This document shows positions 43,645-59,447 of a stretch of DNA of 64,000 bases, in pieces (position 1 is the first letter of the stretch; each line of letters starts with the position of its first letter). Under the pieces are notes generated by a model. The model was not told where the DNA came from. It worked only from the letters and a program-made list of their open reading frames with translations, and searched no databases. The stretch is from positions 62,001 to 126,000 of the IMG/VR virus record IMGVR_UViG_3300024239_000013; one strand, 5' to 3'. The translations under genes were made by a program, and so were the position numbers.

Positions 43645-43648
43645 TTTA

Positions 43649-44842
43649 TTATAGTTCTCTAATTATTTTCATTTTTTCTGCTAAAATCCATTCACCTCCT
43701 TGTGATTCTGGTCTGTTGAAAGTTTCAAAATTTTCAACCTCAACTTCAACCCAAACCCTATCTTTTTTGGATAGATGAGGAGCTTTTGGTTTCTTTAGAC
43801 AATGCCACCCCTTTCTAGATGAATATCCTTTGGTCGGATGTTCCTCTGCTACCATCCACTCGTCGATCGATAATCGCTGTTTTTTGTTTATAAAAAGAGG
43901 GGAAAGCGAACCATCTTTAAGTTTTCTAACTAATTTATAAGCCTTCATCTAATGTTGTCTTTTGTTGTTCAATGGTTTGTTGGGTTTTAGTTATCTCAGA
44001 ACCTAAAACTTCATACGAACACCCAGATCCCGAAGATTTACAGTTTATTTTTTTTAACCAGTACGTCCCATCATATTCATTAAAAGATTCCACAATGAAA
44101 CTTTCATTTGAGACATAGACCAATGATCCTTCTTTAAATTCTTTTTTAACTGTTTTATCTGGCTGATACTGTTGTAGATTTGTCCCACAATCTTTACACC
44201 CAATAGTGAATAAAACTAAAATCAATAATAATTTTTTCATACTATTTTTAAATGTGATTTATGTTCTTTCTTACGTATCAATTAGAAGTTTATAGAATCT
44301 TGTTCGTCTTGTTCTTTTTTATGAATTAAAAAGTTTAATCTATTCTCATATACCAACTCTATGCATTGTGTTTTGTGGATTTTTACTGAATATCCAGTTG
44401 TGTCGAGGATCCAAAAAGAGGTATACCTTGCTTTCTCGAATCTTACTGCCTGAAGTTCATATCCATCACCTTCATAATAAGGGGATTCAAAAGATTCGTA
44501 TCTGTCTTGTGTTATCCCATATTTTTTATTGAAAATTTCTACATATTTCCTATATTCGTCCTTTAGGCTATACCAGCTTGTTTGTTCTGGTAAATAAACT
44601 GCAAATTTCCAAACTGTATAAGATTTTGGACTGCTTACCAAAACTATATTAGCATTAGAATATTGGACCTTTCCGCTTAGAACTATGATGTTTTTATCAC
44701 TGTCAATTACTTTAAATCCCTTTGCTTTAAATTTGGCAACAACTTCATAAAGTTTACCTGAAACTTTAACTCCTAAAAATTCTTGTGAGTATCCTAAAGT
44801 TATTGTAAAAATTAACATTAGGAATGTGATGGTTTTTTTCAT
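43649..44842 (-). other. three CDS (43649-43948; 43935-44240 lipoprotein TIGC; 44282-44842 signal-peptide protein)
   Basis: ORF track, N-terminal hydrophobic signals. Confidence 0.55.
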
Positions 44843-44995
44843 TAAGATATATTTTAATAATTATTTTTTTTTATAAAATTTAATTCTGGATCATATCATT
44901 TATTCCCAGTTTGATTGATATCTACTGAACGATCTTCAGCGGATCCAATAGAATCTAAATCAATTGAAAATTCATAGAAAAACAAATATTTTATT

Positions 44996-45412
44996 CTATT
45001 GTATTAATTTTAAAGATTCCTTTAAAGCAGACTCCAATGCAGATTCATAGGTACAACCCCCTTCTTTTATGAAGAAATATAAATAGTGGTCTGAATATTC
45101 ATCAGTTTTATAGATCTCTACTTTATATTCATTATATCCAGGTTTATTTCGTAATATTTGGATATCTATTTTATGTTCTTCTCTAAGCCACTTCTGTAAA
45201 AGAGATTGTGTTGTTACGTAATACCTTTCACCTTCGTCGAATTCATTATTGCAATCATATATTACACCATCCAAATCTTCGACTATTAAAAACTCATCAT
45301 GCTCCGTGCATAATCCTTTATAGTTGTCACAATAAAAATCTGCAAATCTTAAATTGAATCCTTTTTTCTTAGCCAATTTTGCGGTTTCCTCCGATATCTT
45401 TGTTTCTAGCAT
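44996..45412 (-). CDS. family C paralogue
   Basis: ETAKLAKKKGF...TQSLLQKWLRE...TYESALE..LKESLKLI. Confidence 0.8.
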   Translation of the reverse strand: MLETKISEETAKLAKKKGFNLRFADFYCDNYKGLCTEHDEFLIVEDLDGVIYDCNNEFDEGERYYVTTQSLLQKWLREEHKIDIQILRNKPGYNEYKVEIYKTDEYSDHYLYFFIKEGGCTYESALESALKESLKLIQ

Positions 45413-45479
45413 TTTTTTGTTTTTAAAAAATATAATAATTCTAATATCTTTATAGATTCAATAAATTCCTTATGAAATA

Positions 45480-45725
45480 TTATTCATAATCTTCCGAATC
45501 CTTATTTATATCAAGACTGTCACAAACAGAAAAGATTCCTTTATACTTTTCGTCGTAATCTTCTTCCCAATTCTTCGATATTTCGTTCCAAATATATCCT
45601 TATGAACCTTTAGAGTTTTCCGAATATCTAAATTCAACAATCTCGTCATCAACATCAACCTTTCACTGGATACTTTCGACTCGCCATACAACTTGAACGT
45701 CCTCAAGTAACTTAATTTTTTCCAT
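45480..45725 (-). pseudogene. acidic 81-codon gene with two premature stops
   Basis: MEKIKLLEDVQVVWRVESIQ*KVDVDD...KGS*GYIWNE...EDYE*. Confidence 0.55.
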
Positions 45726-46572
45726 ATTTTTTATATTGTTCAAAACATTTTTTCATTCCACTATAGATTTTAGAATAGTCCTTATTATCTCTTAATTCTA
45801 CACTATGTAAAGCATTTATAATTTCCTCCTCACTATACATTCTTTCTTGTTGCCATTTAGCAATATGAATAAACATTGATTTTATCCAAGTTTTTTCATG
45901 GGGTTGAATGGTTTTTGCTTCTAATAATTCTAAACTATACTTTTCAGCAGCTTCTTCAAGGGTTTCTTGTTTTTGATTTTCTAAAAACTCTTTAACTCCT
46001 TCCTTATCTAAATGTTGAAATTCATTCCAATCTCCAAGAACTTTTTCTTTCGGGTTATTTTTTAGATATTCTTGTAAATTTTCAACAATTGTTTTAGGTT
46101 TGTGTTTTTCTTTTGAAATGATTATTTTGTAAAAAATTTGTGGGTTACATTTATAAGTATAATCACAAGATGATTTAACAGAACTATCACAAGATGTGCA
46201 TTTACAAATAGAATCAAATTTAACCTCCTCACAATTAGGATTTTTAACAAACCATTCTAAAAACTCATCATCAATAGCTTGTACACCATCTTTGATTAAG
46301 TCTTGGTCTGTTGTCATTATGACTAATTTACATTCGGATAAATCAGTTAGATAATTAGGAAACTTATTTAAAATATTTCCTTTTTCTAAATGCCATTTCC
46401 CTTTATGTAGTCTTACATCTTTAATTTCTTCATCATAAGTGATGTAAATGTGTTGGTTATTCAATCTTCCTCCTCTAATAATACAATTCTTATCAAGTCC
46501 TAAATTATTTGTCAATTCAGATCTAAATAATCTACTTGGTTTATCTGTTGGCACTAAATGTATGTTTTTCAT
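45712..46572 (-). CDS. family B paralogue
   Basis: MKNIH..PTDKPSRL / IYIT..EEIK / TTDQDLIKDGVQ.IDDEFLEWFVKNP.CE / KQETLEEAAE / AKWQQE..YSEEE. Confidence 0.85.
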   Translation of the reverse strand: MKNIHLVPTDKPSRLFRSELTNNLGLDKNCIIRGGRLNNQHIYITYDEEIKDVRLHKGKWHLEKGNILNKFPNYLTDLSECKLVIMTTDQDLIKDGVQAIDDEFLEWFVKNPNCEEVKFDSICKCTSCDSSVKSSCDYTYKCNPQIFYKIIISKEKHKPKTIVENLQEYLKNNPKEKVLGDWNEFQHLDKEGVKEFLENQKQETLEEAAEKYSLELLEAKTIQPHEKTWIKSMFIHIAKWQQERMYSEEEIINALHSVELRDNKDYSKIYSGMKKCFEQYKKYGKN

Positions 46573-46577
46573 GACCT

Positions 46578-46970
46578 TTATTTTTCTTTAACAATTTCAA
46601 TTAATTTCTTTAAACATTCAAGTTCTGCTTCTTCTTGTGTTCTACACAAGTACCATTCTCCTATTCCGATTTCCTTATAATTTCCAAAATGTTCATATTG
46701 GAATATGTCAAAACAGAATTTGGGATCTGTTGTTCTGTCTATTTGAATTTCACAAAATAGGTTATATTTCTCTCTAAACCATCTAAATGCTTGTGAGAAT
46801 GTCGGGGCATATATATTTTGAATTGCTTCTTCTAAATAATTGTAATCATTAGGAGAATCCTGATAGTAGATTAAACTATTATTTTGACTATAAAATCCAA
46901 AACAAGATTCATCAAATCCTAATTCTTTTAAAGCTAATGCAATTTTATAAGGTACGAATTCCCTTTCCAT
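46578..46970 (-). CDS. family A paralogue
   Basis: ME.EF.PY..AL.LKELGFDE.C / APTFSQAFRWFREKY / EEAELECLKKLIEIVK. Confidence 0.85.
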   Translation of the reverse strand: MEREFVPYKIALALKELGFDESCFGFYSQNNSLIYYQDSPNDYNYLEEAIQNIYAPTFSQAFRWFREKYNLFCEIQIDRTTDPKFCFDIFQYEHFGNYKEIGIGEWYLCRTQEEAELECLKKLIEIVKEK

Positions 46971-46971
46971 T

Positions 46972-47382
46972 TTAAATTAATTTTAATGCTTCTTGTAACC
47001 CAACCTCGTAGGCTTCTTCATAAGTATCGTAAGTAATATCACCTCTTTTCCACATTTGGATAATACCAACTGGTAATCTATGTAAATCAAATGACCAATT
47101 TAATAATTTATTGTAATTATTATTACTTATTTCAATATGGATATTATGTTGTTCTCTCAACCATTTAGCAAGTAGTGATTGTGTTGGTGCATAAGCAACT
47201 ATTGTTAATATATTACCAAAACTATCTACACTTCCTACAGAATGACTATGATGTAGCTTTATTTTCTTATACTGCTTATTATCACTATTAGGAGTGTTAG
47301 CAAAACAAACATCTGTAAAAATGTTAAATCCTTTTTCTTTTGCAAGTTTTGCTGTTTTAAATGTTATAAGTGTATCTTCCAT
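46972..47382 (-). CDS. family C paralogue
   Basis: TAKLAKEKGF / APTQSLLAKWLRE / TYEEAYEVGLQEALKLI. Confidence 0.85.
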   Translation of the reverse strand: MEDTLITFKTAKLAKEKGFNIFTDVCFANTPNSDNKQYKKIKLHHSHSVGSVDSFGNILTIVAYAPTQSLLAKWLREQHNIHIEISNNNYNKLLNWSFDLHRLPVGIIQMWKRGDITYDTYEEAYEVGLQEALKLI

Positions 47383-47400
47383 AGTTTTTTGTTTGGTAAG

Positions 47401-47886
47401 TTAAAGTTGTTTTTCATTTTGCCCTTTAACAATTTCAAATAATTTCTTTAAACATTCAAGTTCTGCTTCTTCATACGTAAGTGGATGAATGTTTAAATCT
47501 TCTAAAGTTTCACCTTCATCAAACATATCTAATGTTGCGGTAAACCATTCACCTACAGGATATCCCATATAATAAGAATTTTGAGTCCCCTTATTAGTTA
47601 TAAAAATATCGTAATCCCCCCCTAATATAGGGAAAGAATCGTACCCATTTTTTGAACCTAATATGGGTTTCATTGCGTAATGAATATTATATTTCTCTCT
47701 AAACCATCTAAAGATTTGTGAGAACGTTGGAGAAAGACATCCATTATTTCTCTTGAATATATTTCCATTTCTAGCATACTGAATATACAAATAACCATCA
47801 GTACCATAGAAACCAAAGCAAGGTTCATCAAAACCTAAGTCTTTAAGTTCTAATGCTTGTTCATAAGGTATAAATTCTTTTTCCAT
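47401..47886 (-). CDS. family A paralogue
   Basis: Same three constant blocks. Confidence 0.85.
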   Translation of the reverse strand: MEKEFIPYEQALELKDLGFDEPCFGFYGTDGYLYIQYARNGNIFKRNNGCLSPTFSQIFRWFREKYNIHYAMKPILGSKNGYDSFPILGGDYDIFITNKGTQNSYYMGYPVGEWFTATLDMFDEGETLEDLNIHPLTYEEAELECLKKLFEIVKGQNEKQL

Positions 47887-47923
47887 TTATTACTTTTTAA
47901 TTATATAAACACCATGAATTTCT

Positions 47924-48145
47924 TCATATTGAGGTAATCCATTTTTTAAGTTCTTTTATTTCCTTTTTGTAATCATCTTGTTGTACTATTAAACTAAAGT
48001 TTAAAGCGATCGAAAATCCAAATAAAACCACCATTAAAAATACATAATATATTCTTGAATATTTTTTATCATCAATGGCATAGCATACTTTAAAATATCC
48101 TATTATAAATAGAATAATCATTATTACAAGCACTGTTTCTCTCAT
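47924..48145 (-). CDS. small two-TM membrane protein
   Basis: Two hydrophobic segments. Confidence 0.55.
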   Translation of the reverse strand: MRETVLVIMIILFIIGYFKVCYAIDDKKYSRIYYVFLMVVLFGFSIALNFSLIVQQDDYKKEIKELKKWITSI

Positions 48146-48495
48146 AATTTATTTCTTTTATATTGTTCAAACCATTTTTTAAAAACATCTTTCTTAGATA
48201 TTTCAATAATTTCCCATTTTTCTAATTTTATTAACTCTTTATATTGATAATAAAAATCAGCAAATTCAATCATATCTTCCTCTGTATACAAGTTTTTATT
48301 TTGTTCTTGTTGCCATTTAGCACCTTCGATCCATTCGTCCCTATATTGTTTATTTTTATCCCATTCATCATCTTCTAAAACAATTGGGTATAACATATAA
48401 GCAATCTCTTCAAGTGTTTCTTGTTTAGGTTCTTCTAATGGAGTACAATCACAATAAATTGTATGACCACAATAACATTTTGTTTTATTTTCCAT
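48142..48495 (-). CDS. family B C-terminal module with short Cys-rich N-terminus
   Basis: CYCGH..CDC then PKQETLEE...GAKWQQEQNKNLY...WFEQYK. Confidence 0.8.
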   Translation of the reverse strand: MENKTKCYCGHTIYCDCTPLEEPKQETLEEIAYMLYPIVLEDDEWDKNKQYRDEWIEGAKWQQEQNKNLYTEEDMIEFADFYYQYKELIKLEKWEIIEISKKDVFKKWFEQYKRNKL

Positions 48496-48499
48496 TATT

Positions 48500-49285
48500 T
48501 TACTTTTTAAATTGTTTTAAAATTAATTTATTAAACCAATCGCCAAACTGTATTTTTGAAAAACCTACAGATGATAATGCTTCATTATAAGAGTGTTTAG
48601 CAATTTTTTCAACCTCTTCCTCATTATACAAGTTTTTGTTTTGCTCTTGTTGCCATTCTGAACCTAGTCTAAAAAATAATATAAGACTATCAATTAGTGT
48701 TTCGTTTGATATTTTTCCACCTTTAGGATAATCTGAAAAAGTCTTATTAAAAGTTTCTAAAGCAATTCTTTTTGCTATTTGTTCAAGTGTTTCTTGTTTA
48801 GGTTCTTTTTTTGGAATGATTATTTTATATAATTGACCACCGTTATTTAACCACTCATCAAATTCCCTGTCAGTTAACCCTATATCATGTCCGTGAATAT
48901 TTAATTCAACTTCTATCTCATCAGGAGTTTTTTCATCAACATTAATAAACTCACAACTAGGATTTTTAACAAACCATTCTAAAAACTCATCATCAATAGC
49001 TTGTACCCCATCATTTATTAAGTCTTGGTCTGTTGTTAAGATGATTTTAGAAGCATTATCTAATTCTTTAGAAAGTAAATATGATACTTGAACCAATCTA
49101 CCATCTTTAGTGATTATCCAATCATTATCTTTAATGTCTTTTTCAGAAGTAATGTAGATATTTTTAGGTTCAACATATTCAACACCTCCTCTAGGAAATT
49201 TATCAAATATCAAATAGTTTTCCTTTCTAGTTGATAACCATAACCTACTTGGTTTATCTGTTGTTAATAAATGTATGTTTTTCAT
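48500..49285 (-). CDS. family B paralogue
   Basis: All constant blocks. Confidence 0.85.
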   Translation of the reverse strand: MKNIHLLTTDKPSRLWLSTRKENYLIFDKFPRGGVEYVEPKNIYITSEKDIKDNDWIITKDGRLVQVSYLLSKELDNASKIILTTDQDLINDGVQAIDDEFLEWFVKNPSCEFINVDEKTPDEIEVELNIHGHDIGLTDREFDEWLNNGGQLYKIIIPKKEPKQETLEQIAKRIALETFNKTFSDYPKGGKISNETLIDSLILFFRLGSEWQQEQNKNLYNEEEVEKIAKHSYNEALSSVGFSKIQFGDWFNKLILKQFKK

Positions 49286-49290
49286 AATAA

Positions 49291-49680
49291 TTAAATTTTA
49301 AAATCAATATTTTCAGGTTTTAGAATATTTTCATATGCTTCTTTATAAGCTTTTTTTATATAATATGACCCAATTCCTGCATAATAAAAAATATCTGCAA
49401 GTGTTTTGTCTTCTGATTTATTAAATTCATTAGTTGCTAATATTTTTATAAGTCTATCTACTTCATTCTTTAAAGAAGTAAAATAATTATATTCTTCACT
49501 ACCAATTTCGAATTTTTTTACTATTCTATCTTTACCATTATTAATCCAAGTGAAATTATATCTATCAGGTTTATAATCAATATGTTCTATTCTTAAATTT
49601 TTTCCTTCTTCTGCCGATACGTAATAGTATTTAATACGACCTCTAAAATTTATAAGAGCGTAATAATCTTTATTTTCCAT
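49291..49680 (-). CDS. hypothetical protein (MENK start)
   Basis: ORF track, start adjusted. Confidence 0.55.
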   Translation of the reverse strand: MENKDYYALINFRGRIKYYYVSAEEGKNLRIEHIDYKPDRYNFTWINNGKDRIVKKFEIGSEEYNYFTSLKNEVDRLIKILATNEFNKSEDKTLADIFYYAGIGSYYIKKAYKEAYENILKPENIDFKI

Positions 49681-50065
49681 AATTTTGTTCTTTAGCAATT
49701 TCAATTAATTTCTTTAAACATTCAAGTTCTGCTTCTTCGTAAGAATTAAATGATATTCCTTCATGTAAAGTCCAATACATTTCAATATCGCAAAAAACAG
49801 CAAATGTATATGAAGGTTTTGTATGATAATGCACAAATTTATGTAAATTGTGGGTTTTTCTAAACCATCTAAATGCTTGTGAAAATGTTGGTGCAGCAAT
49901 CATTAGTTTATCTCTATTTGAATGAAATGAACATATTTCATCTTTCATAGGAATAGGTTTTAATTTGTTATTTTCTTCTATATCAAAATAAAAACTCAAT
50001 GCTTCATCAAATCCTAATTCTTTTAAAATTAATGCTAAATTATAAGGGATAAATTCTTTTTCCAT
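49670..50065 (-). CDS. family A paralogue
   Basis: Constant blocks. Confidence 0.85.
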   Translation of the reverse strand: MEKEFIPYNLALILKELGFDEALSFYFDIEENNKLKPIPMKDEICSFHSNRDKLMIAAPTFSQAFRWFRKTHNLHKFVHYHTKPSYTFAVFCDIEMYWTLHEGISFNSYEEAELECLKKLIEIAKEQNYGK

Positions 50066-50069
50066 TATT

Positions 50070-50984
50070 TTACTTTTTAAATTGTTGAATCAAGTAAGTT
50101 ATAAACCAATTTCTTTTTCTAACCCACTCATCAAAATTTGTGTTGGAGTTATCTTTTAATTCTTTAGTGTTAATATAATTACTTATATTTATAAGCATGT
50201 CTTTAACTTCTTCCTCTGTATACAAATTTTTATTTTGTTCTTGTTGCCATTTAGCACCATTTATGAAGATTAATCTTTCTGTTTCACTCATATCAAAACC
50301 TGAATCAGTAAAACTATTTATTGTTGTAGGATATAATCTTTCGGCAGCTTCTTCAATTGTTTCTTGTTTTATTTCTTCTTTATCTTGCATCATTGGAATA
50401 GCTAATTTGATTGTCTCTTCACCTATACTTACTAATTCAAACTCTTCTTCTTTTGGTGAATATCCACAATAACATTGTGTTTTAGGTGTTAATGTCATTC
50501 CTTTTGAACCACATTCAGGACAAATATCTTCTTCTTTTGTAATAATTAACACATAAGAATGACTACTTTCATCAAAATAAGGAACTTTGAGAGTTCTAAC
50601 AAAATCACAATTAGGATTTTTTACAAACCATTCTAAGAACTCATCATCAATTTCTTGTACACCATCATTAATTAAGTCTTGGTCTGTTGTTAGGATAATT
50701 TTTTTACAATCACAAATTAAAACTTCAATACCATTAATATGATAGTTTTTTTCTCTAAAAGATTTATTACCGTTCGATTCAGTAATTACTCCAACTTCTA
50801 ATATTCGATTTGTATATAAATGTAAAACAAAACCTTCTTTAATTTCTTCATCAGAAGTGATGTAGATATGTTGATTTAATATAGTATCAGTGCCATATTG
50901 AAATCCTTTAGCAAATCCTAACTTTCCATTATAAATATATAATCTACTTCGTTTTTCTGTTGGTAATAAATGTATGTTTTTCAT
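50070..50984 (-). CDS. family B paralogue
   Basis: Constant blocks; CPECG..CYCG insert. Confidence 0.85.
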   Translation of the reverse strand: MKNIHLLPTEKRSRLYIYNGKLGFAKGFQYGTDTILNQHIYITSDEEIKEGFVLHLYTNRILEVGVITESNGNKSFREKNYHINGIEVLICDCKKIILTTDQDLINDGVQEIDDEFLEWFVKNPNCDFVRTLKVPYFDESSHSYVLIITKEEDICPECGSKGMTLTPKTQCYCGYSPKEEEFELVSIGEETIKLAIPMMQDKEEIKQETIEEAAERLYPTTINSFTDSGFDMSETERLIFINGAKWQQEQNKNLYTEEEVKDMLINISNYINTKELKDNSNTNFDEWVRKRNWFITYLIQQFKK

Positions 50985-50986
50985 AA

Positions 50987-51409
50987 TTATTCTTTAATGT
51001 ATGTGTATTTTGTTAGAATCATAGTTTTAAGTCTCCTTACTTCTCCTATTTGAGCACCTCCTTGACATTTATTAACAAGTTCATTATACTCATTGTACCA
51101 GATTTTTTCTAAATCTTCTTTAGTACCTGTTTTATTTACTAATTCTTCAAAATACTCAGCATAATTCCAGAATATAATAGATTTTCTATTTATAGATATC
51201 GCAAGAATAACCAACCAAGAAAATATCATTCCCATTAAAACACCATATTTTAAATAATTAAGATTATCAGTAAATGTTCTTTCTCCAGAAATGTAGTCTA
51301 ATCCATAGAACAAAGTTGATATAAAAAATATTAAAATTGGATATATTACTATCCACACCTTAAATAAATGTGTCTTTTCGAAAAATCTGTTAAATGTTTT
51401 CATAGACAT
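50987..51409 (-). CDS. two-TM membrane protein, paralogue of 13135-13533
   Basis: Sequence comparison. Confidence 0.6.
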   Translation of the reverse strand: MSMKTFNRFFEKTHLFKVWIVIYPILIFFISTLFYGLDYISGERTFTDNLNYLKYGVLMGMIFSWLVILAISINRKSIIFWNYAEYFEELVNKTGTKEDLEKIWYNEYNELVNKCQGGAQIGEVRRLKTMILTKYTYIKE

Positions 51410-51831
51410 TTTTTCTTAAATTGTTCAAACCATTTATCATAAGTAATATGAACAGGATTATTTTCAACATTATTTTGATAAGATTCAATTATATCGTGAA
51501 CTTCTTCCTCACTATACAATTTTTTATTTTGTTCTTGTTGCCATTTAGCACCATTAATAAAATCTAATTTATTTACTTCACTTGGAACAACATTTTCATA
51601 ATCTAAACCTGTTATTTCTTCCCAATTTTCTGAATATTTTTCAGCAGCTTGTTCGAGTGTTTCTTGTTTAGGTTCAATTTTTTTATAATCAATCCATTCA
51701 AACTTACCTTTATTTTCATAAGAAAATTTACTTGACCATACTTTAATACCTTCATCATAATCATAAAAAGGTTCAGTTTTTAAAATAGTACCATCATTCC
51801 ATTTAATAATACCAATCCAATGTTTTCTCAT
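51400..51831 (-). CDS. chimera: unrelated N-terminus plus family B C-terminal module
   Basis: PKQETLEQAAE...FINGAKWQQEQNK.LYSEEE...WFEQFKKK. Confidence 0.8.
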   Translation of the reverse strand: MRKHWIGIIKWNDGTILKTEPFYDYDEGIKVWSSKFSYENKGKFEWIDYKKIEPKQETLEQAAEKYSENWEEITGLDYENVVPSEVNKLDFINGAKWQQEQNKKLYSEEEVHDIIESYQNNVENNPVHITYDKWFEQFKKKCL

Positions 51832-51832
51832 A

Positions 51833-52630
51833 TTATTTCTTTTTGAATTGTTCTAAACTTTCATTTTCTGTAAAATGACCAATACTACCAAAATCATACA
51901 TTTTTCTCATATCTTCCTCTGTATACAAGTTTTTATTTTGTTCTTGTTGCCATTTAGCACCTTCGATCCATTCGTCCCTATATTGTTTATTTTTATCCCA
52001 TTCATCATCTTCTAAAACAATTGGGTATAACATATGAGCAACCTCTTCAAGTGTTTCTTGTTTTGGTTCTTCTGTGTAGTGACCTTCACTTCCGCAAGGA
52101 GCATCACAAGTTACACATCTGTAAAATTTATTAGCTTCTCCACATAGAATGTATTTAGTTTCTTCTTTTGTAATTATTATTTGATACCCTATTTTTTCAT
52201 GGTAAATATATGGTAGTCCATTAAGATGTCTCTCTCTTAATTCATCAATATTAAAATACCTTAATTTATCAATAACTTCAATAAATTCACATTTTGGATT
52301 CTTTACAAACCATTCTAAGAACTCATCATCAACTTCTTGTACACCATCTTTGATTAAATCTTTGTCAGTTGTTAGAATAATTTTACTATAATGTTCAACA
52401 TCATTGTATGCTTTTTCAAGTCCTTTAAAAACCTTTTGAATATCGTAGTCTTGTGAAGTGCTATGAACATAATCTCCTTTTTTAATCTCTTCATCAGAAG
52501 TTATGTAGATATGAACCCCTTTATTAAAAAATGAATTCTTTGAACATAATTCAAATTCAAATTCATTTATACCTTTAAACAATTGTAATCTACTTGGTTT
52601 TTCTGTTGGTAATAAATGTATGTTTTTCAT
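51833..52630 (-). CDS. family B paralogue
   Basis: Constant blocks. Confidence 0.85.
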   Translation of the reverse strand: MKNIHLLPTEKPSRLQLFKGINEFEFELCSKNSFFNKGVHIYITSDEEIKKGDYVHSTSQDYDIQKVFKGLEKAYNDVEHYSKIILTTDKDLIKDGVQEVDDEFLEWFVKNPKCEFIEVIDKLRYFNIDELRERHLNGLPYIYHEKIGYQIIITKEETKYILCGEANKFYRCVTCDAPCGSEGHYTEEPKQETLEEVAHMLYPIVLEDDEWDKNKQYRDEWIEGAKWQQEQNKNLYTEEDMRKMYDFGSIGHFTENESLEQFKKK

Positions 52631-52652
52631 GCCCTTATTTTTTTAGTGATTA

Positions 52653-53126
52653 TTACATAATATCAGTAGAATGATCAATAAGTTTAAGAGATTCATACAA
52701 ACCCTCCTCTAGTGCATTCTCGTAGGTTTTATGGTGAATAGTAAAGAAAGATAATCTTTTCCAAGGTTTACCCGACGGATTTTCCTTATTTGGAACATAG
52801 ATTTCGAATCCAAAATCTCCAGCGATTTTTTGGACTATTAGGACCCTTATTTTATGGGTCTCTCTTAACCAGCATTGAAGATGTGATTGAGTAGGAGCAG
52901 AATATACCTCATAAGAATTATTCGACATATCAAAACCATCGACACCATTCTTATGATAAAAATTTGACATTTCGACCTGATCTTTTTTATAAGATTCTGG
53001 GTGATCTGGATCATCGTCATAAACGTAATCTTTCTTATAAATCACATATGAATTATAAACTCCTAAATCAAAATTCTTATTCTTAGCTAATTTTGCGGTC
53101 TTCTTTGATATCAATCTATCTACCAT
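52653..53126 (-). CDS. family C paralogue
   Basis: TAKLAK.K.F / APTQS.LQ.WLRE / TYENALEEGL.ESLKLI. Confidence 0.8.
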   Translation of the reverse strand: MVDRLISKKTAKLAKNKNFDLGVYNSYVIYKKDYVYDDDPDHPESYKKDQVEMSNFYHKNGVDGFDMSNNSYEVYSAPTQSHLQCWLRETHKIRVLIVQKIAGDFGFEIYVPNKENPSGKPWKRLSFFTIHHKTYENALEEGLYESLKLIDHSTDIM

Positions 53127-53229
53127 ATCGTTTTATATTATGAAGCAAATCTATAAAATTATTACGGAGATAAAAAATAACAACAAAAAATGCACGCTCT
53201 TTATGTGTGATAATTTTTTGGATTCATAT

Positions 53230-53601
53230 TTAGTCACATTGATCCTTGCATAATCTAATTAATGTGTTAAGGCACTCTAGTCTGGCTTCATCGTAGATAC
53301 TAAATTCTTTAGATTTAATAAAAGTAAAACCGGGTTTCGTTACTACAGAGTAGTATAGTGGTAATTTAGGATTTTCGAAAGCATAGGAAACACTACTCTC
53401 CATTTTATAGTTATATCTAAAAAAATCAAAAGCTTGCTGCCAAAGGGGAGCTGATGCAACTTGACCATGGAAACTGAATTGTTTTTTACAATACTCCATA
53501 TTAAGGTACTTATCATCAAGATAACAAGCATAGCATGGTTCATCAAATCCAAGTTTTTCAAGTTCTAATGCTTGTTCATACGGGATAAATTGTTCTTCCA
53601 T
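53230..53601 (-). CDS. family A paralogue (divergent)
   Basis: FIPYEQALELEKLGFDEPC / APLWQQAFDFFR / YDEARLECL. Confidence 0.8.
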   Translation of the reverse strand: MEEQFIPYEQALELEKLGFDEPCYACYLDDKYLNMEYCKKQFSFHGQVASAPLWQQAFDFFRYNYKMESSVSYAFENPKLPLYYSVVTKPGFTFIKSKEFSIYDEARLECLNTLIRLCKDQCD

Positions 53602-53607
53602 AATCTT

Positions 53608-53922
53608 CTATTTTCGTTTGACAATTTCAATTAATTTCTTTAAACATTCAAGTTCTGCTTCTTCGTATGTTTTAAAAACGCTCAGGTTCCACTTTTCAAA
53701 AAACCACATTCCGTATTTTATTTGTATTGAGTAGTACAGTCCATACTTTTCCCTAAACCATCTAAATGTTTGTGAAAATGTTGGTGCTTTATTGATACCA
53801 TCGGAATATCCATAACAAACTTTATTGTTACTAAACTCGTCATAAAATCCCAAACAAGATTCATTAAAACCTAATTCTTTTAAAGATAATGCAACTTCAT
53901 AAGGTAAAAACTCTTTTTCCAT
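53608..53922 (-). CDS. family A paralogue (shortest)
   Basis: Constant blocks. Confidence 0.85.
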   Translation of the reverse strand: MEKEFLPYEVALSLKELGFNESCLGFYDEFSNNKVCYGYSDGINKAPTFSQTFRWFREKYGLYYSIQIKYGMWFFEKWNLSVFKTYEEAELECLKKLIEIVKRK

Positions 53923-53923
53923 T

Positions 53924-54291
53924 TTAAATTAATTTTAATGCTTCTTGTAAACCAATCTCGTAGGATTCTTCATAATTATTTTTTTCTACACTTTGATACC
54001 CTTTTACAATTGGTTTGTCAAAACAAGGTGTTAATATATATTTTTTAATTCCATTGGAAAAAGCTCTCTGAACTAAATATCAATTTCATGTTCTTCTCTC
54101 AGCCATTTAGCAAGTAGTGATTGAGTTGCCCTTTCGTACCATTCTTTACAAGTATCAACCATAGCACCACCTATCCCTAAATTTTCTATACTACCATCAT
54201 CTCTAAACTTTCCTTTTGTTTTTCTTGATTGTGGAAATCCTTTTTCTTTAGCAAGTTTTGCTGTTTCAGATGTTATTCTTGTATCTACCAT
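53924..54291 (-). pseudogene. family C paralogue with 1-nt frameshift near 54075
   Basis: After EEHEIDI the alternative frame reads LVQRAF...YEESYEIGLQEALKLI*. Confidence 0.8.
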
Positions 54292-54423
54292 ATCGTTTTT
54301 ATTATGAAGCAAATCTATAAAATTATTACGAGGATAAAAAATAACAATAAAAAAAATAGATGTTCTTTATGTGTGATAATTTTTTGGATTCATATTTAGT
54401 CACATTGATCCTTGCATAACCTT

Positions 54424-54792
54424 CTATTTTCGTTTGACAATTTCAATTAATTTCTTTAAACATTCAAGTTCTGCTTCTTCGTATGTACCATTATAGTTCA
54501 TAGGTTCAGTTCCAAGTTGTCTATTTCCTTTATTATCAAAAACTTGATAAGAAAACTCTTGTGTTCCAATCTCAATTAAACCACATAATTTATACTTTTC
54601 TCTAAAGAATCTAAATGCTTGTGAGAATGTTGGGCAGTTAATTGTATTATACAACATTGAACCTCTTGGTGAAGATTTACTTCCTTTAACGTGAATGTAA
54701 CCTATTTGGTCTATACTACCAAAACAAGTCTCATCAAATCCTAATTCTTTAAGTTCTAATGCCAAATTATAAGGTACAAATTCTTTTTCCAT
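54424..54792 (-). CDS. family A paralogue
   Basis: Constant blocks; last about 60 nt identical to 53608-53922. Confidence 0.85.
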   Translation of the reverse strand: MEKEFVPYNLALELKELGFDETCFGSIDQIGYIHVKGSKSSPRGSMLYNTINCPTFSQAFRFFREKYKLCGLIEIGTQEFSYQVFDNKGNRQLGTEPMNYNGTYEEAELECLKKLIEIVKRK

Positions 54793-54990
54793 TTATTTCT
54801 TTTTAAATTTATCACATCTTTTAATCCAGTGTGGGTCATAATTACTAGGAAAAAAGAAAGACCATTGATTCCATGTAGCATCTAATTTTTTATTTCTTCC
54901 TTTAAAATCTTCTTTTTGCCATTCAGCATTACATTTTGAATGAGCGTCTCCTATAATTTTTTCTCTAAATTTACAATTTATACAATTCAT
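54793..54990 (-). CDS. small Cys-rich protein
   Basis: CINC..GDAHSKC..FP.NYDP.W..C. Confidence 0.55.
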   Translation of the reverse strand: MNCINCKFREKIIGDAHSKCNAEWQKEDFKGRNKKLDATWNQWSFFFPSNYDPHWIKRCDKFKKK

Positions 54991-54993
54991 GAT

Positions 54994-55857
54994 TCATTTA
55001 TTTTTAAATTGTTCAAACCATTGTTGTTCTGTTAAATTAGAGTCTAATCCATATGTTTCAGAATAACTAATATTTTGTTCTCCTTGTCTAAATGCTTCCC
55101 TTAAATCTTCCTCACTATATAAGTTTTCATCTTGTTTTTGTTGCCATTTAGCACCAGTTATAAATGAACCGTAGTTGTCTCCTGCGGTATTATCGTTATT
55201 TGACCACTTATTACCATTGATTTCAAATACCCATTTTTTAGCAGCTTCTTCTAGTGCTTCTTGTTTAGACTCTAACTCATGAGAATATTTTTCTAAACCT
55301 TGTTGCTCGTATTCTTGAACTGTTTGTTTAGGCTCTTTTTTTCTCATAGGACAATGTATTGAATGACAATTTTTAAAATTAGAGGTTCTACATTTTGGAC
55401 AATTGATAGGTTCTTCTTTTGATATTTCGGTATCTTCTTTTGGAATGATTATTTCATAGTCGTAAGTATCCCCAACTTCATGAAAATATTTTTCAACTTC
55501 AACCTCCTCACAATTTGGATTCTCAACAAACCACTCTAAAAACTCATCATCAATTTCTTGAACACCATCTTTGATTAAGTCTTGGTCTGTTGTTAAAATG
55601 ATTTTTTTAGGTTTATTATTACTTCTTAAAGCCATTGTGTTTTGCCAAAACCAAACTCTACCGTTATTATAAACCCAAACATCATTTTCAAAACCTGTTA
55701 TTTCTTCATCAGAAGTGATATAAATATTAACATATTCTTTAAATGAGTCATTTACTTCAACATCTAATTTTAATGTGAAAGTTTCTCTATTAACATCATT
55801 GTAAATTTTAACTAATCTACTCGGTTTATTTGTTGGTAAGATGTATAAGTTTTTCAT
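54994..55857 (-). CDS. family B paralogue
   Basis: Constant blocks; CPKC..CHSIHC insert. Confidence 0.85.
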   Translation of the reverse strand: MKNLYILPTNKPSRLVKIYNDVNRETFTLKLDVEVNDSFKEYVNIYITSDEEITGFENDVWVYNNGRVWFWQNTMALRSNNKPKKIILTTDQDLIKDGVQEIDDEFLEWFVENPNCEEVEVEKYFHEVGDTYDYEIIIPKEDTEISKEEPINCPKCRTSNFKNCHSIHCPMRKKEPKQTVQEYEQQGLEKYSHELESKQEALEEAAKKWVFEINGNKWSNNDNTAGDNYGSFITGAKWQQKQDENLYSEEDLREAFRQGEQNISYSETYGLDSNLTEQQWFEQFKNK

Positions 55858-55994
55858 TGTTGTTTTAATTTTCTATAACAAATATATAACAATTATTTTT
55901 TATTCAACGGGATATTTTATAAAAATTTAATACTACTACAAAATCATCATTTACTTTTAATCTTTTGAAATTGTTCAATCATTTTAATATGTTT

Positions 55995-56654
55995 TTATAG
56001 GTTTTTTTCAACCCATTTATCCCATTCAAAAAAGACACTATGCAAAGAATCCGATTTCCAGCCATTTTCACAATATTCCTTTACTTTATTAGCAAATTCA
56101 ATAACCTCTTCCCTACTCCAGCTATCTTTTGCTATCTTAATTGTAATAGTATTGTCTTGTGGATTTATTTTTAATATAGATTTAACCTTATCATAACCAT
56201 ATGCATCTAGTTCATCCACATATTCTTTACCCTCAAATTTATTTTCACATTCAACTAATACATCGGTAATAATGTTCCCACGATTATATTCTTCAATATA
56301 TTTTTGAATAAATTGTTGTGATGGTTGAGGTAATTCTAAAGAAGAGTCAGTCGAAGCAATTACTTTTTTAGCTACATTTTTAAATTCCTTAGTAATAGCC
56401 TCTAATCTTTTTGAATCACATTTATGTAATCCATAATAAGAAGATTTCATAGATGTACCTAAATACCAGTCATTTTCTTTAATTTCATCATCTGAAATAA
56501 TATAAAGATGATGCCCAATATAATCTTCATGTTCCATTAAATATTTAGTTTTAATAGCAATTATTTTATCTTGTCCTGTTATATCTTTACAAATCATTCC
56601 ATCTGTTTTTTGATTAGTTGGTAGCATTACCACATTCGCATTAATAAAGCTCAT
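55995..56654 (-). CDS. distant family B relative
   Basis: MLPT / HLYIISDDEIKENDW / KVIASTD / WSREEV. Confidence 0.65.
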   Translation of the reverse strand: MSFINANVVMLPTNQKTDGMICKDITGQDKIIAIKTKYLMEHEDYIGHHLYIISDDEIKENDWYLGTSMKSSYYGLHKCDSKRLEAITKEFKNVAKKVIASTDSSLELPQPSQQFIQKYIEEYNRGNIITDVLVECENKFEGKEYVDELDAYGYDKVKSILKINPQDNTITIKIAKDSWSREEVIEFANKVKEYCENGWKSDSLHSVFFEWDKWVEKNL

Positions 56655-56693
56655 TTTTTTTATTTTTTTTAAGTTCTGTAAAATTATTATTTT

Positions 56694-57104
56694 TTAAATT
56701 AATTTTAATGCTTCTTGTAATCCAATCTCATAGGCTTCTTCATAAGTTTTAAAATGCAGTGTGAAGTATGCTAATCTTTCAAAAGGTTTTCCGACAGGAT
56801 TGTCTTTATTTGGAATATAAATTTCGAATCCAAAATCTCCTGCAATTTTTTGTATTGGGTATACTCTTATACTATATTCTTCTCTCAACCATTTAGCAAG
56901 TAGTGATTGTGTTGGGGCAGAAACAAATTCTATATCAGATGTATTTTCTCCTCTTATATACTTTCTTATCCTCCAATCTGATACATCTCCTTTAAATTCT
57001 CCCTTGTAATTATAATAAGGAATTTCAAGTCTGTTAGTTTCTTGGAAAAATCCTTTTTCTTTAGCAAGTTTTGCGGTTTCAAATGTTACTCTTGTATCTT
57101 CCAT
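56694..57104 (-). CDS. family C paralogue
   Basis: MEDTRVTFETAKLAKEKGF / APTQSLLAKWLRE / TYEEAYEIGLQEALKLI. Confidence 0.85.
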   Translation of the reverse strand: MEDTRVTFETAKLAKEKGFFQETNRLEIPYYNYKGEFKGDVSDWRIRKYIRGENTSDIEFVSAPTQSLLAKWLREEYSIRVYPIQKIAGDFGFEIYIPNKDNPVGKPFERLAYFTLHFKTYEEAYEIGLQEALKLI

Positions 57105-57128
57105 ATTTTTTTGTTTAGTAAGCAAAAG

Positions 57129-57563
57129 TTATTTTATATTTTGTTTTTTAACAATTTCTATTAATTTTCTGATACAAGCAAGTTCTGCCTCCTCGTAAGA
57201 GTTATAAATTATTCCACTTTGCATTTCAGATAAAAAGTCTTGCCTTATGTTTTCAGAAATATTTTTAATCTCATAAGCATAATCTATTTTATTAATTGGT
57301 AAAACTATACAAGAGTGTAATTTATACTTCTCTCTAAACCATCTAAATGCTTGCTGATATAGTGGTGCGGATATAGGTTCATTTTCAAATCCTTCTAATT
57401 GACTATTTAGAAGTAAATGAGGACAATGTGATAGAGGATTACCTTCATTTACAGTATCATAACAAAATAAACTTATTTCATCAAAGCCTAATTCTTTGAG
57501 TTCTAATGCTAATTCGTAAGGACAGAAAAGACTTTCCATTCCTTGTTTTTTTACTTCTTCCAT
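57129..57563 (-). CDS. family A paralogue
   Basis: Constant blocks. Confidence 0.85.
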   Translation of the reverse strand: MEEVKKQGMESLFCPYELALELKELGFDEISLFCYDTVNEGNPLSHCPHLLLNSQLEGFENEPISAPLYQQAFRWFREKYKLHSCIVLPINKIDYAYEIKNISENIRQDFLSEMQSGIIYNSYEEAELACIRKLIEIVKKQNIK

Positions 57564-58424
57564 TTATTTCTTTTTAGATAATAAAAAATCTTCTTTTGCA
57601 TCTACTCTAAATGAACTAGCATATTTATGAAATAATAAATCAATAATTTTTAAAACCTCTTCTTCACTATACATTCTTTCTTGTTGACATTTGACTAATT
57701 CTATTGCTCGTTTGATGACTATAGGTTTTGTTATATCTCCAAAACCGTCAAATATTCTTTCAGCAGCTTCTTCAAGTGTTTCTTGTTTGGGTTTTAAATT
57801 TTGTAACTCAATAATACTTCTAGTACCAAAGCCTATTTGTTTTAGTTTACTTTGTTCTATATTAAGTGCTTCTTCTAAAGTTAGATTAAATTGTTTTAAA
57901 GAGTTCTCTAATCTTACTGATATTACTTGTTTCTTTTCTTCTTTTGGAATGATTATTTTAAATAGTATGTGAGTTCTATAATTACCATGACAGGTTTTAT
58001 ATTTAGGATTGTTTTTGTCTTCATTACAATTACTACATACGTAATTATATTTAACATCAACCTTTTCACAACTTGGATTCTTAACAAACCATTCTAAGAA
58101 CTCATCATCAATTTCTTGAACACCATCTTTGATTAAGTCTGGGTGTGTTGTTAGGATTACTTTTTTATACTTATAATCAGTACCTGTTGATATATTCAAG
58201 ACTTGTTCCTCATTACATTTAAATAATTCAGTAATTTTTTCATTATTAGGTGTAAATTCGATACACCAATCTCCCTTTTTAATTATTTCATCAGAAGTAA
58301 TGTAGATGTGTTGAGATGTATTGAATGGTAATACATTTTTTGATAATTCTAACTTACCTTGAAGTAAATTATTTTTCCATAATCTACTTGGTTTATCTGT
58401 TGGTAATATATGTATATTTTTCAT
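57564..58424 (-). CDS. family B paralogue
   Basis: Constant blocks. Confidence 0.85.
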   Translation of the reverse strand: MKNIHILPTDKPSRLWKNNLLQGKLELSKNVLPFNTSQHIYITSDEIIKKGDWCIEFTPNNEKITELFKCNEEQVLNISTGTDYKYKKVILTTHPDLIKDGVQEIDDEFLEWFVKNPSCEKVDVKYNYVCSNCNEDKNNPKYKTCHGNYRTHILFKIIIPKEEKKQVISVRLENSLKQFNLTLEEALNIEQSKLKQIGFGTRSIIELQNLKPKQETLEEAAERIFDGFGDITKPIVIKRAIELVKCQQERMYSEEEVLKIIDLLFHKYASSFRVDAKEDFLLSKKK

Positions 58425-58816
58425 AGTTTTTCTTCTTTAACAATTTCTATTAATTTTTTTAAACACTCATGTTCTGCTTCTTCGTAAGAATAGTAAGGAC
58501 TTGAATAAAAATCTTTTTTAATGTAATCATCTATTCCAAAATAGAACCCTTTATTTTCTCTTTGTTGATACAATGACTTAATATGAGACTCTATATTATA
58601 TTTCTCTCTAAAAAATCTAAATGCTTGAGAAAATGTTGGTGCTCCACATAAATCTTCCCATTCACTATTTTTTGCTAAATAAGGAAAATCTTTTAATATG
58701 TGCCTTTCAATATAATCTAAATCTCCATTTGGTTCATAATAACCAAAACAAGGTTCATCAAAACCTAAGTCTTTAAGTTCTAATGCCAAATTATAAGGTA
58801 TAAATTCTTTTTCCAT
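58421..58816 (-). CDS. family A paralogue, first gene after promoter 58838
   Basis: MEKEFIPYNLALELKDLGFDEPCFG... Confidence 0.85.
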   Translation of the reverse strand: MEKEFIPYNLALELKDLGFDEPCFGYYEPNGDLDYIERHILKDFPYLAKNSEWEDLCGAPTFSQAFRFFREKYNIESHIKSLYQQRENKGFYFGIDDYIKKDFYSSPYYSYEEAEHECLKKLIEIVKEEKL

Positions 58817-58879
58817 AATGTCCATCTTATTAAAGGACAAATTTATAAAAATGTTACGAATAAAAAAAATATCAGAAAT

Positions 58880-59447
58880 CTATAAGTTTCCTGATATTAA
58901 TCTTTTAGCATTAGAAATAATTTCTTCTATTTCATAAGCCCCTTCAAAGGTTCCTGTGCTAAGTACACATACACATTTTCCATTTTTATCTAATATTCTA
59001 GGAGGTGATTTACCATCCCATTCAAATGTCCATGGGGTTTCTAGTGAATCTTTAATATTAGCAATAGAAATTCTTCTTTGAGCTTCAGCATTATGCTCTT
59101 CTGGAGTCATTTGTTTCTTTTTAGCCATTCCTTTATTATTTGAATGCAAAAATAATAAAAGATAACGAGATAAAAAAAATAATCTATAATAATATGTTTT
59201 TAATACACATGACCAAGCAATCCTCAATTGTTTTTATATTTTCTGTGCAGTAATCGCCACCAAATCCCCCATGAACAGCATGCATTCCTCTTTCATCTGT
59301 TACAGAAACATAAAAATCGTCTATTCTTTGTTTCTCTATAATTATTTGATGGTTTTTGTAGTAGCATTCAAGAGAATTTTCACTTTGATGTGTTATCATT
59401 TTATCTCTTATTATTCTGGTCTTACCTTCAACTAAAACTTTTATCAT
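58880..59447 (-). other. two small hypothetical CDS (58880-about 59128, 59184-59447)
   Basis: ORF track. Confidence 0.5.

What the first reader, a model, noticed from the sequence alone, without database searches (positions are those of the whole stretch)
53118..54486. Duplicated promoter unit with one gene excised at an 8-bp microhomology
The promoter-containing spacer is present twice. In the second copy gene 53230-53601 is missing except for its last codons (CKDQCD*). The join matches recombination between CATAATCT at 53249 and 53599, with one mismatch. The flanking A and C genes share only their ends with their counterparts, not their interiors. This shows expansion, contraction and interior replacement in one place.
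Basis: seen in the sequence. Interest (0 to 1): 0.6.

Follow-up and report, generated by a model that had tools for sequence, protein, structure and literature searches.

The report
Gene shuffling scar in jumbo phage
In a 319-kb uncultured freshwater/subsurface phage, a promoter-bearing spacer really does occur twice within an array of small paralogous genes, one copy having lost its neighbouring gene by a 350-bp deletion at an 8-bp repeat; this is a well-documented but ordinary example of recombination reshaping a variable phage region.

Summary
Window 53118-53256 matches 54283-54422 (130 of 141 columns). Window 53599-53670 matches 54415-54486 (71 of 72). Identity falls to 51-57% just outside. 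Unit 2 lacks exactly 350 bp. In unit 1 that stretch is bounded by CATAATCT on both sides; random deletions show 8 bp or more about 6 times in 10,000.

All genes lie on the minus strand of a 319-kb IMG/VR jumbo phage. They belong to an array (window 43-59 kb) built from two protein superfamilies of unknown function.

Both spacers carry a promoter-like motif (T-run-ATCYCG, about 12 nt, TAnnTTTG). It occurs 31 times on the coding strand, against 1-2 in shuffles.

The junction is real. A second assembly is identical, k-mer depth is uniform, and a related strain from another study (L095/L096) carries the same junction.

That strain lacks the 1166 bp between the two spacers. At least 12 other contigs carry unit 1 alone.

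The unit-2 C gene is a frameshifted cassette. Intact homologues, 92-96% identical, sit in unrelated phages.

Best reading: a hyperplastic paralog array remodelled by unequal recombination at promoter spacers and conserved gene ends, plus one microhomology deletion. The closest known parallel is the PeSL cassettes of T4-type phages. It is a new member of a known kind, of modest interest.

The parts
54424..54792 (-). Gene A2 (122 aa), a member of the 'MEKEF' family (phrog_25117). Its last 21 codons are identical at the nucleotide level to those of A1.
54415..54422 (.). Deletion junction CATAACCT. It corresponds to the merged copies of CATAATCT in unit 1, with one mismatch.
   Evidence: The same junction, with the same variant base, is present in L095/L096.
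54396..54417 (-). Remnant of the 3' end of gene B (ATGCAAGGATCAATGTGACTAA on the minus strand). It is no longer part of a gene.
54292..54395 (-). Spacer 2, between the B remnant and the C2 start. It carries the promoter-like motif at 54310-54340, 18 nt before the ATG.
53923..54291 (-). C2psi, a C-family ('MVD', phrog_12005) cassette broken by a 1-nt loss in a homopolymer run (plus-strand AAA at 54075-54077; intact homologues have four). The frame-0 ORF ends at 54073 and the rest is readable in another frame down to 53923. Codons 1-3 (MVD) are of the C1 type, whereas all intact homologues start MED.
53608..53922 (-). Gene A1 (104 aa), MEKEF family
53599..53606 (.). Upstream copy of the 8-bp repeat CATAATCT. 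On the minus strand it reads AGATTATG and includes the ATG of B.
53230..53601 (-). Gene B (123 aa), a divergent MEKEF-family member. This is the gene missing from unit 2.
   Evidence: It is conserved next to spacer 1 in at least 12 contigs from other samples.
53249..53256 (.). Downstream copy of the 8-bp repeat CATAATCT, inside the B tail
53127..53229 (-). Spacer 1, between B and C1. It carries the promoter-like motif at 53146-53176, 19 nt before the ATG.
52653..53126 (-). Gene C1 (157 aa), C family (phrog_12005, E 1.5e-21)
43000..59300 (-). The surrounding array of paralogues. The three blastp families are MKN (11 copies in the genome), A/B (8) and C (6). Many short high-identity patches link the paralogues.

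Best explanation
The locus is a recombination scar in a hyperplastic array of small paralogous genes in an uncultured 319-kb phage.

A segment was present in two versions. It ran from the conserved 3' end of an A gene, through gene B and a promoter-bearing spacer, to the first codons of a C gene. In one version B was removed by a 350-bp deletion between two copies of an 8-bp repeat, by slippage or microhomology-mediated joining. This left the B tail as dead sequence.

In this genome the B-less version (A2, scar, spacer 2) and the intact version (A1, B, spacer 1, C1) lie in tandem. Between them sits a C-family cassette (C2psi) that is also found in unrelated phages and is frameshifted here.

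The tandem state and the single states seen in other strains interconvert by unequal homologous recombination. The substrates are the two 139-nt spacers and the nucleotide-conserved gene ends.

Shown: the repeat, the missing 350 bp, the microhomology, the motif recurrence, the strain haplotypes, the foreign cassette and its frameshift.

Inferred: that the motif is a working promoter, the enzymatic route of the deletion, and the order of events.
For: Repeat and deletion geometry.

Microhomology beyond chance: about 6e-4.

Polarity of the event favours deletion over insertion:
- The B start (MEEQFIPY..) and end (..ECLNTLIRL) align with the family N- and C-terminal motifs.
- B next to spacer 1 is unchanged in at least 12 contigs from other samples, always with AGATTATG at both places.

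Promoter-like motif: 31 hits on the coding strand. Of these, 28 are fully intergenic and most lie 12-44 nt before a start. This compares with 9 on the other strand and 1-2 in shuffles.

The junction is real and all parts sit in one genome:
- An ENA contig is identical over 20,372 bp.
- Contigs of run X1 break exactly where 31-mers become shared between the two spacers (53165 and 53224).
- Their depth is uniform at 39-43.

Strain haplotypes:
- L095/L096 equal 'unit-2 left part + C1', with 29 differences in 1303 nt. Only 1 of these is in the scar and spacer.
- L013 and L097-L105, and contigs of X3, X4 and X7, cross unit 1 without a break, so the spacer is single-copy there.

Foreign cassette: C2 is 92-96% identical in L094, L106, L107, L108 and L109, on different phage backbones. 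Similarity stops at the gene edges, and the window copy has lost 1 nt.

Other repeat-flanked changes and mosaic patches:
- A 3.3-kb indel in L013 lies at a 45-nt repeat that is 42/45 identical.
- A 167-nt patch is 98% identical between two paralogues.
Against: - No raw reads were available, so no read-level view of the junction or of minority forms was obtained.
- No expression data were laid on the spacers, so promoter activity rests on motif recurrence and position only.
- The upstream half of the motif is a T-run followed by ATC, not the canonical TTTG -33 box of Bacteroidota.
- No recombinase was identified in the genome. RecA and RecT are absent, and there are two AAA_24 hits below the cut-off.
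- The junction carries one mismatch (C for T). No unit-1 copy has it, so it must be a later substitution or a repair product.
- The direction of the 1166-bp difference between this genome and L095 is unresolved.
Confidence: 0.8

Rival explanations
1. The tandem arrangement is an assembly chimera of two co-occurring haplotypes, one with the scar and one with B, joined at the shared repeat.
For: Both single haplotypes exist in other samples. The repeat has exact runs of 56-66 nt, which short k-mers cannot resolve. The JGI and ENA assemblies may derive from the same reads.
Against: C1 would be shared by both haplotypes and should then have summed depth. Instead C1 (41.2), B (39.3), C2psi (43.2) and A2 (42.1) have equal depth in run X1 (table 8). 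The spacer2-to-C2psi joint places spacer-2 markers within 15 nt of C2-specific bases. Given that joint, only the tandem path gives a linear genome. Two assemblers gave the same path, and the ENA contig name implies k=141, which would exceed the repeat length.
Confidence: 0.04
2. Gene B was inserted into unit 1, with the 8-bp repeat as a target-site duplication. On this view it was not deleted from unit 2, and the scar-like state is ancestral.
For: An insert flanked by an 8-bp direct repeat is also the signature of transposition. The stretch between the repeats is 342 bp, a whole number of codons.
Against: The insert would have had to lack its own ATG and land in frame just after a pre-existing ATG. 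It would also have had to lack its own stop. The 342 bp hold no transposase, and I saw no terminal inverted repeats by eye. The B ends align with the family termini. B next to spacer 1 is the commonest and most widely sampled state.
Confidence: 0.05
3. On the order of events: the tandem state is ancestral, and the single states are derived from it by deletions between direct repeats. L095 would arise by spacer 2 x spacer 1 exchange, and B-only strains by exchange between the A 3' ends. The alternative is that the tandem state was built by unequal exchange between two single-unit haplotypes.
For: L095 is exactly the product expected from a crossover between the two spacers. Direct repeats of 139 nt and 72 nt flank the segments concerned. 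In run X7 the depth over the A1 interior is near zero (2.7 against 34), as expected for an A-end x A-end deletion.
Against: The crossover in L095 would lie in the last 18 of 139 nt. The C2psi start carries the C1-type codon 2 (MVD, not MED). This suggests that spacer 2 was joined first to a C1-type gene, as in L095, and only later to the C2 body. The spacers differ by about 8%, whereas the strains differ by 1-3%, so both spacer types pre-date the strain splits.
Confidence: 0.35

Closest known systems
PeSL (promoter-early stem-loop) cassettes in hyperplastic regions of T4-type phages (Arbiol et al. 2010, PMC2839356; Comeau et al. 2014, PMC4122927)
   Same: Both are short promoter-bearing intergenic cassettes repeated among small non-essential ORFs. 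In both, indels between close relatives are flanked by two copies of the cassette; here that is the 1166-bp difference between this genome and L095. Both sit in a region rich in ORFans that differs between near-identical strains.
   Different: No stem-loop or terminator accompanies the promoter here (fold z-scores 0.6 and 0.2). The promoter type is TAnnTTTG (Bacteroidota-like), not sigma-70. Only about 30 nt are shared among the 31 copies, and just these two spacers share 139 nt. Much of the exchange uses conserved coding ends, not the cassette. Mini-circles were not tested.
Modular exchange at conserved boundary sequences in phage genomes (Botstein's modular theory; from my own knowledge, not checked in a paper here)
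   Same: Gene-sized modules are shared at 92-98% nucleotide identity between otherwise unrelated phage backbones. Similarity ends at the gene borders.
   Different: Here the boundaries are the conserved first and last codons of one protein superfamily, not intergenic linkers.
Multigene-family arrays of large DNA viruses that expand and contract by unequal recombination, such as poxvirus gene 'accordions' and ASFV MGF regions (from my own knowledge, not checked in a paper here)
   Same: Tandem paralogues, strain-to-strain gain and loss of members, and frameshifted copies.
   Different: The host domain, the gene families and the scale all differ. No selective driver was shown here.
Microhomology-bounded spontaneous deletions in phages (illegitimate recombination at short repeats; from my own knowledge). 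See also the spontaneous deletion of an ORFan region in a cyanophage, listed (PMC4503421) but not read.
   Same: A few-hundred-bp deletion whose ends lie in a short direct repeat, with one copy retained.
   Different: Nothing notable. This part is textbook.

Membership tests
PeSL-type mobile regulatory cassette | Contains an early-type promoter | tested here: inconclusive
   A promoter-like motif recurs 31 times on the coding strand; 28 copies are intergenic and most lie 12-44 nt before a start. There is no transcript evidence. No sigma-70-type match falls in the spacers on the coding strand.
PeSL-type mobile regulatory cassette | A stem-loop terminator joined to the promoter | tested here: not met
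   RNA folds of both spacers are no better than shuffles (z 0.60 and 0.18). The only terminator-like hit lies on the non-coding strand, in spacer 1 only.
PeSL-type mobile regulatory cassette | Indels between close relatives are bounded by two cassettes | tested here: met
   L095/L096 lack the 1166 bp between spacer 2 and spacer 1 and keep one spacer.
PeSL-type mobile regulatory cassette | Excised mini-circles | not testable with these tools
   Only contigs, not raw reads, were served. The 'goes back' joints seen there trace to cross-mapping of a paralogue at 46.6-47.0 kb.
Microhomology-mediated deletion | A short direct repeat at both ends of the lost segment, with one copy kept at the junction | tested here: met
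   CATAATCT stands at 53249 and 53599, and CATAACCT at 54415. The chance of 8 bp or more is about 6e-4.
Microhomology-mediated deletion | The undeleted state is ancestral | tested here: met
   The B termini match the family termini. B+ is found in at least 12 contigs from several studies, including a lineage about 10% diverged over the wider 53655-52280 region.
phrog_12005 / phrog_25117 (phage proteins of unknown function) | A significant profile match | tested here: met
   C1 scores 1.5e-21 and the 143-aa paralogue 4.9e-24 against phrog_12005. A1, A2 and B score 1e-5 to 5e-7 against phrog_25117. The A and C profiles are homologous to each other (hhalign 98.5%).
Transposon insertion with target-site duplication | A transposase or terminal inverted repeats in the flanked segment | tested here: not met
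   The 342 bp between the repeats encode only the B body, a family member. I saw no inverted ends when reading the sequence.

The most novel reading that the evidence does not exclude
The conserved first and last codons of this protein superfamily, together with the shared promoter spacer, might act as dedicated recombination joints. These codons are kept near-identical at the nucleotide level among otherwise diverged paralogues. Such joints would let freshwater phages with unrelated backbones trade and re-sort single-gene cassettes. That would be a PeSL-like shuffling system without the stem-loop, using coding ends, in phages with Bacteroidota-type promoters.
Probability: 0.3. Interest if true: 0.55.

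Novelty: new member of a known kind. Interest (0 to 1): 0.33.

Why it matters
This locus gives a clean, strain-resolved example of how variable regions of very large uncultured phages change. Four things are visible within 2 kb:
- a microhomology deletion;
- a repeat-flanked 1.2-kb gain or loss;
- import of a cassette shared with unrelated phages;
- decay of that cassette by a 1-nt frameshift.

At least three haplotypes are documented in public metagenomes. The work also yields a candidate promoter consensus for this phage (T-run-ATCYCG, about 12 nt, TAnnTTTG), which could guide annotation and host prediction. It does not reveal a new mechanism, and the genes involved remain of unknown function.

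Tried and rejected
- Pfam scans of ten proteins from the locus gave nothing above cut-off.
- Sigma-70 and terminator scans gave nothing in the spacers on the coding strand.
- The megablast of the locus against INPHARED and an exact 26-mer scan of IMG/VR found no near relatives. The B protein has only about 30%-identical relatives in IMG/VR.
- The JGI metagenome scan with A2 found over 500 relatives at 41-59% identity, but no near-identical strain other than the source contig.
- AlphaFold models of C2 (pLDDT 82.5) and A2 (pLDDT 87.3) gave no convincing fold match. The best Foldseek E-value was 0.075, to dsRBD-like halves. The best VIA Z was 5.9, below the stated noise level. I make no functional claim from them.
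- The ESM Atlas returned only unnamed viral clusters.
- RecA and RecT families are absent from the genome. AAA_24 gave two hits below the cut-off, so no recombinase is named.
- Several 'joints' in the contig lay-out looked at first like variants of the locus: 52630>54433, 54634>53842 and the loose end at 54235 in X1. They trace to other paralogues of the same genome, for example window 47296-47325 and 58414-58489, and were discarded.
- The X4 and X7 contigs that join an A 3' end to a C start over 16-36 nt are not in this genome. They could not be placed.

Full report
**Setting**

The window is bases 62001-126000 of a single 319,334-bp IMG/VR virus record, rated complete by CheckV. Its source contig is Ga0247724_1000003.

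The genome has 31% G+C. About 90% of the ORFs I called lie on the minus strand. Its Dda-like helicase is only about 30% identical to that of any deposited phage. So this is an uncultured jumbo phage.

Near-identical DNA occurs in subsurface, freshwater, estuary and wastewater metagenomes from 12 studies.

**The observation**

A gapped alignment shows that 53118-53256 equals 54283-54422 at 130 of 141 columns, with exact runs of 56 and 31 nt (counts). It also shows that 53599-53670 equals 54415-54486 at 71 of 72, with an exact run of 66 nt. Just outside either edge identity drops to 51-57%.

The two patches are offset by 1166 and 816 bp. So unit 2 lacks exactly 350 bp that unit 1 has.

That stretch is bounded in unit 1 by CATAATCT at 53249 and at 53599. 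Unit 2 has a single CATAACCT at 54415.

Read on the coding strand, the repeat is AGATTATG. One copy contains the start codon of gene B (53230-53601, 123 aa). The other lies six codons before its stop. Unit 2 retains only ATGCAAGGATCAATGTGACTAA.

Random deletions of 100-1500 bp in this genome have a slidable junction of 8 bp or more about 5-6 times in 10,000.

**What the genes are**

A self-comparison of all ORFs finds multigene families:
- an 'MKN' family with 11 copies;
- an 'MEKEF' family with 8 copies, which includes A1, A2 and B;
- an 'MVD' family with 6 copies, which includes C1 and C2psi.

All three are clustered at window 43-59 kb.

PHROGs places the C genes in phrog_12005 and A/B in phrog_25117, both of unknown function. 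Pfam gives nothing.

Profiles of the A and C families are homologous to each other (hhalign probability 98.5%). So the array is built from two superfamilies.

AlphaFold models are confident (pLDDT 82.5 and 87.3). They match nothing convincingly. The ESM Atlas returns only unnamed viral clusters. Function stays open, and I make no claim from the weak dsRBD-like resemblance.

**The promoter**

Listing every TAnnTTTG in intergenic DNA on the coding strand revealed a longer shared motif: a T-run, then ATC(C/T)CG, then about 12 nt, then TAnnTTTG.

A pattern for it hits 31 times on the minus strand. Of these, 28 are fully intergenic, mostly 12-44 nt before a start codon. The plus strand has 9 hits, and composition-matched shuffles give 1-2.

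Both spacers carry the motif 18-19 nt before the C-gene ATG, at 53146-53176 and 54310-54340.

TAnnTTTG is the -7 box of Bacteroidota promoters (established knowledge, not tested here). The upstream half of the motif is not the canonical TTTG.

Neither spacer folds better than shuffles, so there is no attached stem-loop. Promoter activity is inferred, not shown.

**Is the junction real?**

Only Logan contigs, not raw reads, were served. Four lines of evidence nevertheless support it.

1. In run X1, the likely source, contigs stop at 53165 and resume at 53224. Those are exactly the points where 31-mers become shared between the two spacers. So both copies are in the data.
2. The unique contigs over C1, B, C2psi and A2 have depths of 41.2, 39.3, 43.2 and 42.1. 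A mix of two haplotypes sharing C1 would give C1 a summed depth. One genome therefore holds all the parts.
3. An ENA assembly contig (k141_97055, 276 kb) is identical over 20,372 bp. It may rest on the same reads.
4. Independent support comes from Logan contigs of ERR2832478 and ERR2832473 (L095, L096). They carry the same scar with the same variant base.

**Strain haplotypes**

L095 has the order 65-aa gene, A2, scar, spacer of type 2, and then a C gene of the C1 type from codon 4 onward. It equals 'unit-2 left part + C1' of this genome with 29 differences in 1303 nt. Only one of those differences is in the scar plus spacer. So L095 lacks the 1166 bp from the C2psi body through A1 and B to spacer 1.

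Conversely, at least 12 contigs from other runs cross B, spacer 1 and C1 without a break, with AGATTATG at both positions and spacer 1 essentially unchanged (L013 and L097-L105; also contigs of X3, X4 and X7). An unbroken k=31 contig means the spacer is single-copy there.

Three states therefore exist:
- B-bearing unit only;
- scarred unit only;
- both in tandem, as in this genome.

Other differences follow the same logic. In L013, C1 is followed by the MKN gene that lies 3.3 kb further on in this genome. The switch falls in a 45-nt repeat that is 42/45 identical. L095 and L097 lack several further array genes.

**The unit-2 C gene**

It is only about 30% identical in protein to C1. It is 92-96% identical in DNA to intact 122-aa genes on at least two different phage backbones:
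- L094, L106 and L109 have RusA, dGTPase and HD neighbours;
- L107 and L108 have HNH and RNase H neighbours.

Similarity starts about 10 nt before the ATG and ends at the stop codon.

Relative to all five intact copies, the window's copy has lost one base of a four-base run (plus-strand AAA at 54075-54077). This splits the frame.

All intact copies begin ATGGAAGATACAA (MED). The window's copy begins ATGGTAGATACAA (MVD), like C1 (ATGGTAGATAGATTG). The right edge of the repeated patch is thus a recombination joint inside codons 2-4, at the shared AGATA.

This suggests that spacer 2 was first attached to a C1-type gene, as in L095, and only later to the C2 body.

**Mechanism and order**

The deletion of B by microhomology is well supported. 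Four points argue for it:
- the repeat is beyond chance;
- the B ends align with the family's N- and C-terminal motifs;
- the undeleted form is the common one;
- the alternative, insertion with a target-site duplication, would need a gene without its own ATG or stop to land in frame after a pre-existing ATG.

For the tandem state I favour unequal exchange between a scarred haplotype and a B-bearing haplotype at the short shared C-gene start. The reverse cannot be excluded: the tandem state could be ancestral, with L095 produced by a crossover between the spacers.

The spacers differ by about 8% while the strains differ by 1-3%. So both spacer types are older than the strain splits.

No phage recombinase could be named.

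**Comparison with known systems**

The nearest described system is the PeSL cassette of T4-type phages (PMC2839356, PMC4122927). PeSLs are promoter-plus-terminator units that are repeated in hyperplastic regions and flank indels between close relatives.

Here the promoter-like element and the cassette-flanked indel are present. The stem-loop is absent, and mini-circles could not be tested. Much of the exchange also uses conserved coding ends, not the cassette.

I therefore say that it works like a PeSL-mediated hyperplastic region, but I do not file it as a PeSL.

Self-blastn shows that the same patchwork is general in the array. Examples are 48270-48436 vs 51907-52073 (98% over 167 nt) and 46890-47027 vs 53842-53979 (89% over 138 nt).

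**Verdict**

The finding is a clear but ordinary footprint of recombination in a variable phage region. It is made more informative by the strain haplotypes and by the cassette shared with other phages. Interest is modest.

Noticed in passing
whole genome; in the window e.g. 4108, 8840, 20045, 28650, 42936, 58838, 59147 (minus strand): A genome-wide promoter-like consensus: a T-run, then ATC(C/T)CG, then about 12 nt, then TAnnTTTG. It has 31 copies on the coding strand, mostly 12-44 nt before gene starts. The -7 box points to a Bacteroidota host.
   Followed up: partly
window 54075-54077 (C2psi, 53923-54291): Loss of one base in a four-base homopolymer frameshifts a cassette that is intact in five homologues from other phages.
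   Followed up: yes
window 57556-57788; L095:8303-8536; L106 and L109:7776-8008: A 233-nt module forms the 3' end of a 286-aa MKN gene here. It is 98% identical to a free-standing 82-aa gene in a related strain and in unrelated phage backbones, where it sits directly before the C2 cassette.
   Followed up: partly
window 48270-48436 vs 51907-52073: A 167-nt patch is 98% identical between two otherwise diverged paralogues. This is the strongest gene-conversion-like patch in the array.
   Followed up: no
genome 38.6-50.8 kb (before the window): A second tandem array holds 12 paralogues of 231-320 aa.
   Followed up: no
genome ORFs at window-relative 87298 (366 aa) and 132421 (397 aa), outside the window; L094:2361-3432; L109:6504-7451: IS605 OrfB/TnpB-like genes occur in this phage (about 30-34% identical to the L094 copy) and in the unrelated phages that share the C2 cassette.
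   Followed up: no
L013:1020-1313; L095:10497-10816: In related strains C1 is followed by the MKN gene found at window 48500-49285, not the one at 51833-52630. This is a 3.3-kb difference whose breakpoint lies in the conserved MKN 5' end (45-nt repeat).
   Followed up: partly
contigs of runs X4 and X7 at window 54235-54303 and 54438 onward (tables 5c and 7): Contigs join an A-family 3' end to a C-family start over only 16-36 nt, and then continue into sequence that is absent from this genome. They may show what follows A2 in those strains, or they may be an extra paralogue pair.
   Followed up: partly
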